From Antechinus flavipes (lineage: Eukaryota), in assembly GCF_016432865.1 (NCBI RefSeq), contig NC_067400.1, forward strand, positions 522,536,001 through 522,600,000: 64,000 nucleotides of DNA, given 5' to 3'. Positions 6,689 through 63,132 of this stretch are shown one piece after another; position 1 is the first letter of the stretch, and every line of letters begins with the position of its first letter. Position numbers and translations under genes: made by a program. Under the pieces are notes generated by a model. It ran no database searches, was not told where the DNA came from, and was given only the letters and a program-made list of their open reading frames with translations.

Positions 6689-7735
6689 TTTTTTTCTTTT
6701 GTTTTTTTTTTTTTAATTAAAGGTTTTTATTTTTCAAAACATATACATGGACAATCCTTTAACATTAGCTTTTACAAAATCTTGTGTTCCCATTTTCCTT
6801 CATTTCCCCCTGCCCTTCTCTAGATGGCAAGTAGTCCAATATATGTTAAACATGGTAGAAATATATGTTAAATCCAATATGTGCATACATATTTATATTA
6901 TTTTTGCGCTACACAAGAAAAATCAGATCAAACCAGTAAAAAAAAAAAAACAGAATAAAATGCAAGCAAGCAACAACAAAAAAAGTGAAAATTGTATGTT
7001 GTGAACCATATTCAGTTCCCACAGTCCTCTCTCTGGGTATAGATGGCTCTCTTCATCACTGAACAATTAGAACTGGTTTGAATCATCTCATTGTTGAAAA
7101 GAGCCACGTCCATCATAATTGAGCATCATATAATTTTGTTATTGCCTTGTATAGTGATCTCCTGATTCTGCTCATTTCACTTAGCATCAGTTCATGCAAG
7201 TCTCTCCAGGCCTCTCTGAAATCATCCTGCTGATTATTTCTTACAGAAAAATAATATACCATAACATTCATGTACCATAATTTTATTCAGCCATTCTCCA
7301 ACTGATGGGCATTCATTCAGTTTCCAATTTCTTGCCACTACAAAAAGGACTGCCACAAACATTTTTGCACATGTGGGTCCCTTTCCCTCTTTTAAGATCT
7401 CTTTGGAATATACTCCCAGCAGAAACACTGCTAGGTCAAAGGGTATGCACACTTTGATAACTTTTTGAGCATAGTTCCAAATTGCTCTCCAGAATGTTTG
7501 GATCCGTTCGCAATTCCACCAACAATGTATCAGTGTTCCAGTTTTCCCACATCCCCTCCATCATTCATCATTATCTTTTCCTGTCATTTTAGCCAATCTG
7601 ACAGGTGTGTAGTGATATCTCAGAGCTGTCTTAATTTGCATTTTTCTGATCAGTAGTGATTAGGAGCACCTTTTCATATAACTAGAAATAGTTTCAATTT
7701 TTCATCTGAAAATTGTTCATATTCTTTGACCATTT
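6689..7735 (-). mobile_element. 5'-truncated L1 (ORF2 C-terminus, 3'UTR, polyA) with 13-bp TSD
   Basis: Poly-T at the left end. ORF 7234-7452 is the L1 ORF2 C-terminus (MCIPFDLAVFLLGVYSKE...WKLNECPSVGEW). TSD CTGATTCAGTCTT at 6676-6688 and 7736-7748. Confidence 0.95.
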
Positions 7736-7974
7736 CTGATTCAGTCTTGACAGAACCAAGGACACATGGCTTTTCCCTCACTTGGGAACTTTGAAGTTGG
7801 CAATTCTGGAGTCTTAAATATTAGCTGAAGCTGCTGCCATTCCAGGACAGTAATCTACCACAAGCGGATAATTCCTTTCTGCCTTCTTCCAACTAGATTC
7901 CTTGCTTCTATTGGTTAGTGAGGAGATATACAAAAAGATGCTGCTATTTGAAAGCTGTCTTGTTCTGCTTGACC

Positions 7975-23974: not shown

Positions 23975-24270
23975 TGTGTTGTGGTTGTTCAGTCATTTTC
24001 AGTTGTGTTTTACTCTTCTTGACCCCATTTGGGCTTAAGGATTTTTTTCTTAGTTGTTTTGTTTTGTTTTGTTTTATTTTGGATGAAATACTAGAATGGT
24101 TTGCCATTTCCTCCTCTAGCTCACTTTACAAATGAGGAAATTAAGAACCGGGATTAAAAGACCTTCCCAGAGTCACACAACTAGTAAGTGTCAGAGACCA
24201 CTTTTGAATTCAGGAAGATGATGTTTCCTGATTTTAAGTCTGGTACTTTACTATGCCACCTAGCTGTTTA
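23975..24270 (-). mobile_element. Mar1 core-SINE with (GTTTT)n expansion
   Basis: gttgttcagtcattttcag...gaccccatttggg...tactagaatggtttgccatttcc...gtcacacaactagtaagtgtc. Confidence 0.8.
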
Positions 24271-24707
24271 TAACTATACATAAAAGAATATCATGATGTC
24301 ATTATGAAGTATTGATTAAAGGGGAAAAAAGTAGAATTGGGAGGATCTTTTATCAGGATTTTGCAAAAATATAGATGGGGAAGTAAAATGGATAATTTAG
24401 ATAATTCTGATTATAGGAAATTAAAAAGATTTTGTACAAACAAAAGCAGTGCAGCCAAAATTAGAAACAAAGTAAGAAATAGAAGGGGAAGTTTTTTACA
24501 GCACATTTCTCCTTTAAGGGTCTCATTCCTCAAAAAAGAAGAAAAATGAGCCAGATTTATAAAAAATAAATGTCATTCCCCCATTGAGAGTCAAAGAATA
24601 TAAACAGGCAGTTTTCAGAAGAAGAAATCAAAACTATCAACTGTTATATTTATAAAATATTCTAAATCAGTATTGTTAAGAAAAATACAGATTAAAACAA
24701 CTTGGAG

Positions 24708-24952
24708 ATTTTTGTGAGTCTCCAGATATCCTGAACTTTCAGCAGCTCTTGCCATTGATGAGTTATATACTCCCTTCTCTTTGAGAAAATTTTTTTCTCC
24801 TCTGTCTTTAAAGATTCTATACTCTCCTGGATTTCCTTCCTTCTACTTCTGTAACCACTCCTGTATAACATGTTCCTAATGCTTTAAAGTAGAGAACAGC
24901 CAATGTCTATCTCCAGTCCTTCCCTTTTCTGTTTTTATACTGTTTCCCAGGC
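24708..24952. repeat. 245-bp inverted duplicate of 26106-26350
   Basis: Base-by-base reverse-complement comparison gives one mismatch (24870 vs 26188). Confidence 0.95.
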
Positions 24953-25096
24953 TGGCTAACATGACAGAAGAGGCAGAATTATAAATTACTCTAACCATTC
25001 TGGAAAAAAATTGGAACTATGCTCAAAGACTTAAAAAACTGCATACTCTTTCACCTAGCAAAACTGCTACCAACACTGTCTACTCAAAGCAAGCAA

Positions 25097-25149
<53 letters not shown>
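25097..25149. repeat. A-run followed by (AG)n microsatellite
   Basis: Direct reading. Confidence 0.95.
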
Positions 25150-25154
<5 letters not shown>

Positions 25155-25719
25155 CAAGGATATTTATGGTAGCTCTTTTTATAGTAGCAAAGAATTGGAA
25201 ACTGTGAAGGGATGCCTATCAAGTGAGAAATGGCTAGAAAGTTATGGCATATGATTGTGATAGAAAACAGTTGTGCTATAAGAAATGACAAGCACAATGA
25301 TTTTGTGGAAACTATGAAGACTTAGATAAACTGATGAAATGTGAAGTGGCTCAAATCAGAAGAACAATGTGCATAGTAATAGCAATATTGTAACAATGAT
25401 CAAGTGTGAAAGGCTTAATTATTCTAATCCATACAACAGTCTAAGACAATCCCAAAGGGCTCATAATGAAGAGTGCTATCCAGAGAGAAAGAAGTGATGA
25501 ACTCTGAGTGCAAATTTTTTTTTCACTTTCTGTGTTTTTCTTGCTTTTGAGGAGTGGGGATCTGTGTAGCTAACATGGAAATATGTTTTGCATGACTTTA
25601 TACTTATATTTGATATCATGTTTCTTGCCTTCTCTATGGGTGGGAAAGGGAATAGAGGGAGAGAAAGAATTTTGGATTCAAAATTTTTAAATGAATATTA
25701 AAGTATTGTTTTTCAAAAT

Positions 25720-26385
25720 TTAGATAGATTTTAACAAAGCCATTTGCTAAGGACTGGCAGTTGAGGGGAGAAAGTATTATATAAGATAAATGTTATGAAG
25801 AATAGATACACCTTGGAAACAGATTATTAAATAGGAGACATAAAGGAGACTGGAAAGTTAGGGGCAGGGTTATGAGTTGTGGGGTAATGCTACAAACAAG
25901 TCATGAAGTCAGAAAGGAAAAACAGGTTTGGAAGGAAGATGACAGGCTTTGTTATGTGTATAGAACTTCCATGTAAAGATCCTATACTGTAGGCATTTGG
26001 CAAAATGGATATGAAATACAAGAAGAGAAATCAAGATTGGAAGGGCATATTTGGGGAGCATTTATATAATAGGAGTAGCCACTAAAACTGAGAAAATGAA
26101 ATATTGCCTGGGAAACAGTATAAAAACAGAAAAGGGAAGGACTGGAGATAGACATTGGCTGTTCTCTACTTTAAAGCATTAGGAACACGTTATACAGGAG
26201 TGGTTACAGAAGTAGAAGGAAGGAAATCCAGGAGAGTATAGAATCTTTAAAGACAGAGGAGAAAAAAATTTTCTCAAAGAGAAGGGAGTATATAACTCAT
26301 CAATGGCAAGAGCTGCTGAAAGTTCAGGATATCTGGAGACTCACAAAAATAGATCATTAGATTTGGGTTAATATCACTTATCTTC
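25720..26385 (-). mobile_element. Degraded L2 fragment (source of the inverted duplicate)
   Basis: Purine-rich antisense L2 signature (gagctgctgaaagttcaggatatctggag..aaaatagatcattagatttgg). Confidence 0.6.
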
Positions 26386-27319
26386 TTTACAGGAATATTG
26401 TTTGGGTTAATTAACATGAGTTAGTTGATTATATAATCTTTTTGTAAACATATGGCAATTATCCCTAAAACCCAGCTTTAAAAAGAGGGGGAAAACCTAG
26501 CCCTTGGTGCCTTTTGTTAACTTGTAATGATTAACAAATTGGAGTTGCCTTTTTACCTTAATATTTTATGAAATGCTTTGTATTCTTAACAAAAGCAAAT
26601 ATTATTTTTGAACTTTTTTTCACTATAATCTTTTGCATTATCACCATGGCATAGGTGTTGGGTGTATAGAAGCTTTCCATAGGCATAAGGCCTCTCCTCT
26701 ACCTGGGATGTTGTGAGAAAAATGTGTGCTACAAAAGGTCAAATGCCCATGTATGGACAAAACTGCCTGTCCACATGAATTTTGAAAGACAAGGTAGGAG
26801 AGCAGCAGTTGGCAAGCTGCTTTCTGATTTTTCTTTTTGAGGAGATTTTTCATTTTATGAGTTTAGCTAATATTTGAAACAACACAATACTTACATTGTG
26901 TAGAAAATATAAATGTTCTACTTTCCCACAACTTTAGGGAGGGTGGGAATAAGCAATAATTAATTTTTTTTTCTGTTTAGACTTGATTTCTTCAAGTAAA
27001 CAATAAAAAGACTAAATAAACCCTAGGTCAGAGTTATGAATTATCTTGTGAAACTGGCAGGAATTATAACTTCTTGATATAGAAGATAAATTTTGTACAC
27101 TTGGTTCCAAGGCATAATGTTGAGGGGATTGTGATATTTAGATTAATCCAAATACCTCCCCTTCTGAATACTCTCTTTTCTTTAATTTGTTTTTTGGGAA
27201 AGAGGAAGGTATGTAGGTTTTTGTTTTTTGTTTTTGTTGGGGGTTTTCTGGTTTGTTTAGTTTTGTTTTAGATTCTCTCAGTTCTTCCTGCTGTCTTCTT
27301 AGTCTCTTTTGCTGATTCT

Positions 27320-30510: not shown

Positions 30511-30530
30511 CTTTCTCTCTCTCTCTTTCT

Positions 30531-30594
<64 letters not shown>
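30511..30594. repeat. (CT)n microsatellite within an L2 3' fragment (about 30480-30970)
   Basis: Direct reading; the flanks carry L2 motifs ending tgcttagcacataaaacc..taataaatgcttattgattgagtga. Confidence 0.9.
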
Positions 30595-30599
<5 letters not shown>

Positions 30600-35141: not shown

Positions 35142-35213
35142 AGTTTAAATGCAGTGCAGCTGGTGGATATTGAGCCCTCACCCGTCAGTGCTATGAGAAT
35201 GACCATAGCAGAG
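35142..35213 (+). CDS. FCHSD2: Candidate alternative (cassette) FCHSD2 exon, 72 nt, in frame
   Basis: Branch-like ctaac at 35094-98, pyrimidine tract and cag acceptor, stop-free SLNAVQLVDIEPSPVSAMRMTIAE, donor GAG|gtacat. Phase 0-0, like its neighbours. Confidence 0.7.
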
Positions 35214-52525: not shown

Positions 52526-52682
52526 NNNNNNNNNNNNNNNNNNNNNNNNNNNNNNNNNNNNNNNNNNNNNNNNNNNNNNNNNNNNNNNNNNNNNNNNNNN
52601 NNNNNNNNNNNNNNNNNNNNNNNNNNNNNNNNNNNNNNNNNNNNNNNNNNNNNNNNNNNNNNNNNNNNNNNNNNNNNNNNNN
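52526..52682. other. Assembly gap (157 N) interrupting a SINE head that starts near 52465
   Basis: Run of n; the left flank ends in the B-box ttcctgagttcaaat. Confidence 0.99.
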
Positions 52683-62265: not shown

Positions 62266-63132
62266 TTAAAATTATTTTTATTAAAGCTATTTTCAAAACA
62301 TATGCATTGATAATTTTTTGAAAATCTTGTGTTCCTATGGGAAATGAGATGGAACCACAACATAGCATTTCCACTCCTTCTATTTTTGTCCACTTGCATT
62401 TTTTATTTCCTTTTCAGGTTATTTTTACCTTATGTCTAAATCTGATTTTTCTTGTGCAGCAAAATAACTGTATGGATATGTATACATATATTGTATTTAA
62501 CATATACTTTAACATTTAATATGTATGGGTCTACCTGCCATTTAGAGGAAGGGGTGGGGGGAAGGAGGGAAAAAGTTGGAACAGGTTTTGCAAGAGTCAA
62601 TGCTGAAAAATTACCTATGCATATATCTTGTAAATAAAAAGCTATAATAATAAAAAAAAATCTTGTGTTCCAAATTCCCCTCTTTCTTCCCACCCTCTCC
62701 CTTAGATGGCAAATAATCTATATTAAACATATTAAAATATATGTTAAAACCAATATATGTATACATATTTATATAATTATCTTGTTGCATAAGAAAAATC
62801 AGATTAAAAGGGGAAAAATGAGAAAGAAAAAATACAAGCAAACAACAATATAAAGAGTGAAAATGCTATGTTGTGATCTACACTCAGTTCCCACAATTCT
62901 TTCTCTGGGCATAGATAGCTCTCTTTATCACAAGATCATTGGAACTGACCTGAATCATCTCATTGTTGAAAAGAGCCGCGTCCATCAGAATAGATCACTG
63001 TATAATCTTGTTGTTGCCATGTACAATGTTCTGGTCCTGCTCATTTCACTTATCATCAGTTCCTGTAAGTCTCTCCAGCTTCTCTGAAATCATCCTGCTA
63101 ATCATTTCTTATAGAACAATAATATTCCACAA
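62266..63132 (-). mobile_element. 5'-truncated L1 3' end (host of a nested L1) with 18-bp TSD
   Basis: Homologous to 6689-7260. TSD CTTTCT(G/A)TAGATTCTTTT at 62248-62265 and 63133-63150. Confidence 0.9.
62336..62656 (+). mobile_element. Nested L1 3'UTR insertion with 15-bp TSD
   Basis: Homologous to the 3'UTR at 30170-30459, with a polyA end. TSD AAAATCTTGTGTTCC at 62321-62335 and 62657-62671. Confidence 0.92.

What the first reader, a model, noticed from the sequence alone, without database searches (positions are those of the whole stretch)
24708..26350. Near-perfect 245-bp inverted templated insertion: an old L2 segment copied into a neighbouring L1
Seen: 24708-24952 is the reverse complement of 26106-26350 with one mismatch, at a CpG (26188), and a 1153-bp spacer. 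The right copy sits inside a continuous degraded L2. The left copy interrupts an L1 between aaaacaacttggag and tggctaacatgacagaa, where about 20 nt of recalled L1 consensus is missing. There is no TSD or polyA, only short junction microhomology (att). Ancient repeats cannot be 99.6% identical by transposition. Inference: this is a recent local template switch (FoSTeS/MMBIR or polymerase-theta-type templated insertion). In FCHSD2 pre-mRNA it would fold into a 245-bp perfect duplex, a strong ADAR or dsRNA-sensor substrate that could affect splicing, in a genome without Alu pairs.
Basis: partly seen in the sequence, partly recalled or inferred. Interest (0 to 1): 0.7.

Follow-up and report, generated by a model that had tools for sequence, protein, structure and literature searches.

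The report
Inverted local copy inside an L1
A 245-base stretch was copied backwards from 1.15 kb away into an old L1 relic inside an intron of the FCHSD2 gene of a small marsupial; it is a genuine repair or replication scar of a known kind, millions of years old and shared by related species, with no evidence yet that it does anything.

Summary
24708-24952 is the reverse complement of 26106-26350 (245 nt). There is one mismatch, at a CpG (24870 A / 26188 C), and the spacer is 1153 nt.

The left arm is the insert. Its two flanks are adjacent parts of one L1, and 21-23 nt of L1 are missing between them. Its strand composition is opposite to that of its flanks. The right arm matches its own surroundings in composition.

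It is not a misassembly and not a multi-copy repeat. Short-read contigs of four differently labelled organisms carry junction sequence. In the most distant one (about 1.6-2% divergent), contigs bridge both left junctions. Depth fits two copies.

It is therefore not a recent or private event. It predates the split of these taxa. In the distant taxon the arms already differ at 5 or more sites, as neutral decay predicts, so gene conversion is not needed to explain the data.

The mechanism is one templated inverted insertion with a small target deletion and 0-2 nt of microhomology. This is a known class: template switch, MMBIR-type or synthesis-dependent repair.

The pre-mRNA duplex is predicted but untested. 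L2 identity could not be tested.

The scan has flagged several similar local inverted insertions elsewhere in this genome.

The parts
24708..24952 (.). Left arm: the inserted, inverted copy (245 nt)
   Evidence: Reverse complement of 26106-26350 with 1 mismatch. It interrupts an L1. Its GC and AT skew is opposite to that of its L1 flanks.
26106..26350 (.). Right arm: the donor segment, native to its context (an old purine-rich repeat, possibly L2)
   Evidence: Strand composition is continuous with both flanks at 25750-26500. No interrupted element was detected. L2 identity was not testable.
24953..26105 (.). Spacer (1153 nt): the rest of the L1 relic, including an A-run and a (GA)n tract at about 25090-25150, then unique or old-repeat DNA
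24590..24707 (+). L1 relic, part left of the insertion (3' part of ORF2, sense on +)
   Evidence: Aligns to a second L1 copy at window 7715-7619 (minus strand), ending exactly at the junction.
24953..25400 (+). L1 relic, part right of the insertion. It resumes 21-23 nt further along L1.
   Evidence: TGGCTAA... matches copy 2 at window 7595. Further blocks are 24990-25060 and 25160-25392.
24870..24870 (.). The single arm-arm mismatch (A here, C of a CpG at 26188). In RNA it would be an A-C mismatch.
   Evidence: The run-X1 contig over the right arm reads T at 26188 and the run-X4 contig reads C.
35142..35213 (+). Context: a 72-nt FCHSD2 exon on the + strand, 8.8 kb downstream. It shows that both arms lie in the sense pre-mRNA.
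Evidence: An ag acceptor and a gt donor flank it on the + strand.

Best explanation
This is a single mutational event in which about 21-23 nt of an old L1 relic were replaced by a reverse-complement copy of a 245-nt segment lying 1153 nt downstream on the same chromosome. The donor was left intact. In the four-point description, a growing DNA 3' end left its template at 24707. It was re-primed with little or no homology (0-2 nt) at the donor, copied 26350 down to 26106, and then rejoined the L1 21-23 nt further on. Two routes give this geometry. One is a replication or break-induced template switch onto the + strand of the donor. The other is a displaced nascent minus strand folding back on itself during synthesis-dependent break repair, with the last junction made by end joining. 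The event happened shortly before the common ancestor of the four organisms sampled. By the published timescale, and if the coded organisms are what I infer, that is several million years ago. The two arms have since decayed neutrally and independently. As a by-product, the sense FCHSD2 pre-mRNA is predicted to contain a 245-bp near-perfect hairpin with a 1.15-kb loop. This is inferred to be an ADAR substrate if the intron is transcribed, and no function is indicated. Shown: structure, direction of copying, target deletion, copy number and presence across taxa. Inferred: the enzymology, DNA versus RNA template, the date, and any RNA consequence.
For: The inverted repeat and its sharp borders are seen. 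L1 continuity across the insert, with 21-23 nt lost, is seen. The left arm has GC skew -0.30 and AT skew -0.22 between L1 flanks of +0.39 and +0.26. The right arm shares the positive skew of 25750-26500. In the reads, X7 contigs span 24611-24804 and 24907-25084, so they bridge both left junctions. X7 contigs spanning 25572-26151 and 26254-26750 bridge both donor borders. In X1, X3 and X4, contigs run from 24923 (30 nt inside the arm) into the L1 flank and from the unique flank to 26135. A k=31 graph gives exactly this for a two-copy repeat. The X3 arm is one 236-nt contig at depth 40.9 against about 19 for its flanks. Arm bins never approach the depths of 10^3-10^4 seen over the L1 parts. For dating, 1132 nt of unique flank give private changes of A 4, B 2, C 2 and D 14, plus 1 shared by B and C. 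Arm-arm differences are 1 in A (expected 1.7-3.9) and at least 5 in D (expected 3.9-6.1). The class is known from the four-point template switch (PMC5453318), MMBIR templated insertions in inverted orientation near their template (PMC8421209), and a human 'interspersed inverted duplication with deletion' (10.1101/200170).
Against: Microhomology is minimal (AT at one junction, none at the other). It is judged against a 70%-identical L1 proxy, so the MMBIR or Pol-theta signature is not demonstrated. The insert is longer (245 nt) and its template farther away (1.15 kb) than in the published short-range template-switch and MMB-TI surveys, which search within about 100 bp. Under the tool's 31-letter rule, only organism D formally bridges the left junctions. 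In the window's own species the outer-left junction lies next to high-copy L1 words and no bridging contig was listed. No outgroup with the empty L1 site was seen. A 55-nt L1 deletion lies 19 nt right of the insert. It could belong to the same event, making it multi-step, or it could be unrelated.
Confidence: 0.8

Rival explanations
1. RNA-templated repair. A double-strand break in the L1 was patched by reverse transcription of the nearby nascent FCHSD2 pre-mRNA, by L1 ORF2p acting without its endonuclease or by polymerase theta. The + strand 3' end at 24707 primed on the sense RNA at 26350.
For: The gene is on the + strand. Extending the + strand 3' end on sense RNA gives exactly the observed inverted orientation. 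Target deletion, no TSD and minimal priming homology (AT) fit endonuclease-independent retro-insertion. An earlier follow-up in this genome (s1-189021) also could not separate RNA from DNA templates.
Against: There is no poly(A), no L1 endonuclease-type TTTT/AA site at the junction and no splice junction in the copied piece. The single arm difference is a CpG transition, not an RNA-editing-type A-to-G change. The closeness of donor and target is explained equally well by DNA template switching.
Confidence: 0.1
2. The duplication is considerably older, and the arms are kept alike by gene conversion between the inverted arms (concerted evolution) or by selection for the hairpin.
For: In X3 the whole arm is one contig at twice the flank depth, carrying a 1+8-nt deletion relative to both arms of the window. 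In X7 the collapsed middle contig (depth 34 against about 20) carries 24817 C>G relative to both window arms. The window arms show 1 difference where up to 3.9 are expected.
Against: Logan contigs pop bubbles, so a change in only one arm would look the same. Expected depths for the 'one arm, bubble popped' case (about 35) fit as well as for 'both arms' (38-40). With the root placed near the A/B/C node, the expectation for A is 1.7 differences against 1 observed (P=0.48). D's arms differ at 5 or more sites, as neutral decay predicts.
Confidence: 0.08
3. Assembly artefact: a chimeric or fold-back read was built into the reference.
For: Fold-back chimeras occur in long-read libraries. No listed contig from the window's own species bridges the outer-left junction.
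Against: The same structure is found in independent short-read data of four organism labels from two studies. In X7 both left junctions and both donor borders are bridged, and lineage-specific substitutions distinguish the two arms.
Confidence: 0.02

Closest known systems
Template-switch mutations under the four-point model (Loytynoja and Goldman 2017, PMC5453318; great-ape survey PMC7954356)
   Same: The fragment between points 1 and 4 (21-23 nt of L1) is replaced by the reverse complement of a nearby 2-to-3 fragment in one event. This creates a perfect inverted repeat and a potential hairpin.
   Different: The published events are short-range and short, tens of bases within a local search region. 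This one copies 245 nt from 1153 nt away. The ancestral state is inferred here from a paralogous L1, not from an orthologous outgroup.
MMBIR/FoSTeS templated insertions (MMB-TI; PMC8421209)
   Same: The insertion lies near its template, in inverted orientation to it, and the donor is retained.
   Different: MMB-TIs are defined with templates within 100 bp and with microhomology at both junctions. Here the template is 1.15 kb away and microhomology is 0-2 nt, which is not demonstrable.
Human complex structural variant class 'interspersed inverted duplication with deletion' (AD'CDE; bioRxiv 10.1101/200170)
   Same: The topology is identical: ABCDE becomes A D' C D E, with B (here 21-23 nt) deleted at the insertion site.
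   Different: The human examples are polymorphic. This one is fixed and shared by several marsupial taxa.
Inverted SINE (Alu) pairs as intramolecular dsRNA and ADAR substrates
   Same: Two inverted arms of a few hundred nt lie in one intron and are predicted to pair (244 of 245 cognate pairs).
   Different: The arms come from a local duplication, not from two transposon insertions. The duplex is near-perfect rather than about 85% paired. Editing was not tested here.

Membership tests
Four-point template-switch mutation / inverted templated insertion | The inserted segment is the reverse complement of a nearby sequence, which is itself retained | tested here: met
   244/245 identity to the reverse complement of 26106-26350, 1153 nt away
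Four-point template-switch mutation / inverted templated insertion | The copy replaces the target fragment between the switch points, in one contiguous block with sharp borders | tested here: met
   L1 flanks abut the insert and 21-23 nt of L1 are missing compared with L1 copy 2
Four-point template-switch mutation / inverted templated insertion | The ancestral (pre-event) state is seen in an orthologous outgroup sequence | not tested
   All four organisms laid carry the insert.
MMBIR templated insertion (MMB-TI, PMC8421209) | The template lies within about 100 bp of the insertion | tested here: not met
   The distance is 1153 nt
MMBIR templated insertion (MMB-TI, PMC8421209) | Microhomology at both junctions | tested here: inconclusive
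   A possible AT at the outer junction and none at the inner one, judged against a paralogous L1 of about 70% identity
L1-mediated retroposition (target-primed reverse transcription) | Poly(A) tail, target-site duplication and a TTTT/AA-like nick site | tested here: not met
   No poly(A), a deletion in place of a TSD, and junction sequence CTTGGAG|ATTTTTG with no T-rich primer end
L1 (identity of the interrupted element) | Both flanks are collinear with another L1 copy | tested here: met
   24590-24707, 24953-25060 and 25160-25392 align in order with window 7730-7129, minus strand. High-copy word depths of 10^3-10^4 lie over these parts.
L2 (identity of the donor context) | Similarity to the L2 consensus running across both arm borders | not testable with these tools
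   No repeat library is on hand. nhmmer and blastn find no second copy in the window. The resemblance to L2 rests on recollection only.
Intramolecular dsRNA / ADAR substrate | Both arms in one transcript, and a long stable duplex | tested here: met
   The gene is on the + strand (exon 35142-35213 with ag/gt). The MFE fold of 24708-26350 pairs 244/245 cognate positions at -698 kcal/mol. That the arms share one intron is inferred.
Intramolecular dsRNA / ADAR substrate | Clustered A-to-G RNA-DNA differences in the arms | not tested

The most novel reading that the evidence does not exclude
The 245-bp inverted repeat is not a passive scar. On this reading its arms co-evolve through arm-to-arm gene conversion or selection for pairing, as hinted by changes that may be shared by both arms in organisms B and D. 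The resulting near-perfect intronic hairpin would be a major ADAR or dsRNA-processing substrate that influences use of the neuron-enriched alternative FCHSD2 exon 8.8 kb downstream.
Probability: 0.06. Interest if true: 0.55.

Novelty: new member of a known kind. Interest (0 to 1): 0.27.

Why it matters
This is a clean, datable example of a large, long-range (245 nt, 1.15 kb) inverted templated insertion in a mammalian germline. Donor, target, direction and target deletion can all be read from the sequence. It shows that one such event creates a near-perfect long hairpin in an intron, and that the hairpin stays near-perfect for millions of years by neutral decay alone. Its value is mainly as one data point. 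The scan's notes list several similar local inverted insertions in this genome, so a systematic count across dasyurids could show whether this lineage makes them unusually often. It could also give the size and distance spectrum beyond what the short-range human surveys can detect. On its own the event is ordinary.

Tried and rejected
1. Other copies of the arm or of its putative L2 context were sought in the window with blastn (word sizes 11 and 7) and nhmmer. None was found, so L2 identity and continuity could not be tested.

2. Exact-product look-ups of two spurious ORFs that span the outer-left junction and the donor's inner border were tried, to fetch contigs of other samples. Neither is on record.

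3. The Rfam scan of 24000-27000 gave only sub-threshold chance hits.

4. I considered gene conversion between the arms. It is rejected as unnecessary. Bubble popping in the contigs hides single-arm changes, and the counts fit neutral decay.

5. I asked whether the '24640 to 24953' joints show an empty allele. They do not. Their sides are only 21 nt and they break at 24640, where many L1 paralogues diverge, so they are other L1 copies.

6. TPRT is rejected: no poly(A), no TSD and no endonuclease-type site.

7. The large protein searches were not used, because no claim here rests on a protein.

The N run at 52526-52682 was left alone.

Full report
**The observation**

Positions 24708-24952 are the reverse complement of 26106-26350 (245 nt), separated by 1153 nt. 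A base-by-base comparison finds one mismatch: A at 24870 against C at 26188. That C belongs to the only CpG in the right arm. Similarity ends abruptly at all four arm ends. The window holds no third copy. This is also the only near-perfect inverted repeat in the 64 kb.

**Which arm is the copy**

- The two flanks of the left arm are neighbouring parts of one L1 relic. A second L1 copy in the window (7400-7760, minus strand) aligns to 24609-24707 and ends exactly at the junction. It then aligns again from TGGCTAA at 24953.
- In that copy, 23 nt (ATATCACTACACACCTGTCAGAT) lie between the two points. Its first two bases, AT, equal the first two bases of the insert. So 21-23 nt of L1 were lost, and microhomology at the outer junction is at most 2 nt.
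- At the inner junction no microhomology is visible. The proxy L1 is only about 70% identical, so this is soft evidence.
- Strand composition gives independent support. The left arm has GC skew -0.30 and AT skew -0.22, between L1 flanks with +0.39 and +0.26. The right arm shares the positive skews of everything from 25750 to 26500.
- The right arm is therefore native and the left arm is an inverted import.
- There is no poly(A), no target-site duplication and no T-rich nick site.

**Is it real, and how many copies exist**

One stretch of 2451 letters was laid on Logan contigs of four runs from four organism labels and two studies.

- **Run X7 (organism D).** A 194-nt contig covers 24611-24804, with 97 nt on each side of the outer-left junction. 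A second contig covers 24907-25084, bridging the inner-left junction. Others cover 25572-26151 and 26254-26750, bridging both donor borders.
- **Runs X1, X3 and X4.** Contigs start at 24923, or end at 26135, exactly 30 nt inside an arm. A k=31 graph produces this where a two-copy repeat collapses. By the tool's 31-letter rule these do not formally bridge, so I count them as supporting only.
- **Depth.** In X3 the whole arm is one 236-nt contig at depth 40.9, against about 19 for its unique flanks. Nowhere do the arms approach the 10^3-10^4 depths seen over the L1 parts.
- **Conclusion.** The structure is not a misassembly, and the unit exists in two copies at 92% identity or more.

**Age**

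All four organisms carry the insertion, so it is neither private nor polymorphic-recent.

- From 1132 nt of unique flank (25374-26105 and 26351-26750), one search gives these private changes: A (identical to the window here) 4, B 2, C 2 and D 14, with 1 shared by B and C. That makes A-B and A-C about 0.6%, and A-D about 1.6%. The shared-word fraction suggests about 2% for A-D.
- In D the arms differ from each other at 24731 and 24762 (left arm only) and at 26118, an inserted A behind 26121, and 26284 (right arm only). That is at least 5 differences.
- The contig ends at 24804, 24775/24936, 26151 and 26254 each sit 30 nt from one of these sites, which confirms the reading.
- Expected arm-arm differences since the A-D split are 1.7-3.9 in A (1 observed; P=0.48 to 0.10) and 3.9-6.1 in D (5 or more observed).
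- The data fit a single event shortly before the common ancestor of A-D, followed by independent neutral decay.
The run pattern resembles the species set of PMC9290055: two individuals of A, then B and D in one 2021 study, and C in a 2020 study. That paper puts the crown of four Antechinus species at about 6.8 Ma and Murexia at about 11 Ma.
- If that decoding is right, which I could not verify, the insertion is at least about 6-11 My old.

**Gene conversion**

Two observations first looked like concerted evolution.

- The X3 arm contig carries a 1+8-nt deletion relative to both window arms.
- The collapsed X7 middle contig (depth 34) carries 24817 C>G.

Logan contigs pop bubbles, so a change in one arm only would look the same. 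The depths cannot separate the two readings. I keep gene conversion as a low-probability rival.

X1 reads T at 26188 where the window has C. This is equally explained by bubble popping between the two arms.

**Mechanism**

The topology is ABCDE to A D' C D E, with B being 21-23 nt. It is the four-point template-switch pattern (PMC5453318). It is also the 'interspersed inverted duplication with deletion' class seen in human populations (10.1101/200170). MMBIR-type templated insertions are likewise inverted copies of a nearby template (PMC8421209). Those, however, are defined within 100 bp and with microhomology at both junctions, and neither condition is met or demonstrable here.

Geometrically, two routes are possible.

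- A + strand 3' end at 24707 copied the + strand of the donor from 26350 down to 26106.
- A displaced nascent minus strand, having already passed the donor and spacer, folded back on itself. It copied 245 nt and returned 21-23 nt further on.

With 0-2 nt of homology, the final junction may simply be end joining. An RNA template, the nascent sense pre-mRNA, would give the same orientation and cannot be excluded. There is no positive sign of one.

**RNA consequence**

The 72-nt FCHSD2 exon at 35142-35213 has its ag and gt on the + strand (gene identity from note s1-179140). Both arms would therefore be in the sense pre-mRNA, presumably in one intron, since the spacer is repeat DNA. The 1643-nt stretch folds with 244 of 245 cognate pairs, at -698 kcal/mol. 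The one mismatch would be A opposite C. No Rfam family matches.

**Verdict**

This is a genuine, well-resolved, old and fixed templated inverted insertion. It is a new example of a known class, larger and longer-range than those in the standard surveys, and nothing indicates a function. Similar local inverted insertions have been flagged by this scan on other pieces of this genome, so a census might be more interesting than this single case.

Noticed in passing
window 24972-24990 (compared with window 7575-7505, minus strand): About 19 nt to the right of the insert, this L1 relic lacks roughly 55 nt that the other L1 copy has (the CWRGCG...HCWW-coding part of ORF2). It may be an unrelated old deletion or a second step of the same complex event. 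It is already present in organism D (X7 contig 24907-25084).
   Followed up: partly
window 24877-24888 (and the mirror positions in 26170-26181): In run X3 (organism B) the collapsed arm contig lacks 1+8 nt relative to both arms of the window. Contigs cannot show whether one arm or both carry the deletion.
   Followed up: partly
window 25085-25160 and 30511-30595: An A-run plus a (GA)n microsatellite lies inside the L1 part of the spacer, and a complementary (TC)n tract lies 5.4 kb downstream. The reads tool skipped 25085-25161 as repeat.
   Followed up: no
window 62338-62893: Two nested, diverged inverted pairs (62439-62515 with 62729-62805 at 86%, and 62338-62409 with 62822-62893 at 78%) lie in L1-like sequence. 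They may be an L1 inversion (twin priming) or two inverted L1 fragments.
   Followed up: no
window 25673: All four runs, including the one otherwise identical to the window, read G where the window has T. The site lies in multi-copy L1 sequence, so this may be paralogue noise or a reference-specific base.
   Followed up: no
other pieces of this genome (scan notes s1-183204, s1-189045, s1-198807, s1-179135, s1-215361, s1-189950): The scan's notes list several further local inverted templated insertions in this genome. This suggests a class worth counting genome-wide.
   Followed up: no
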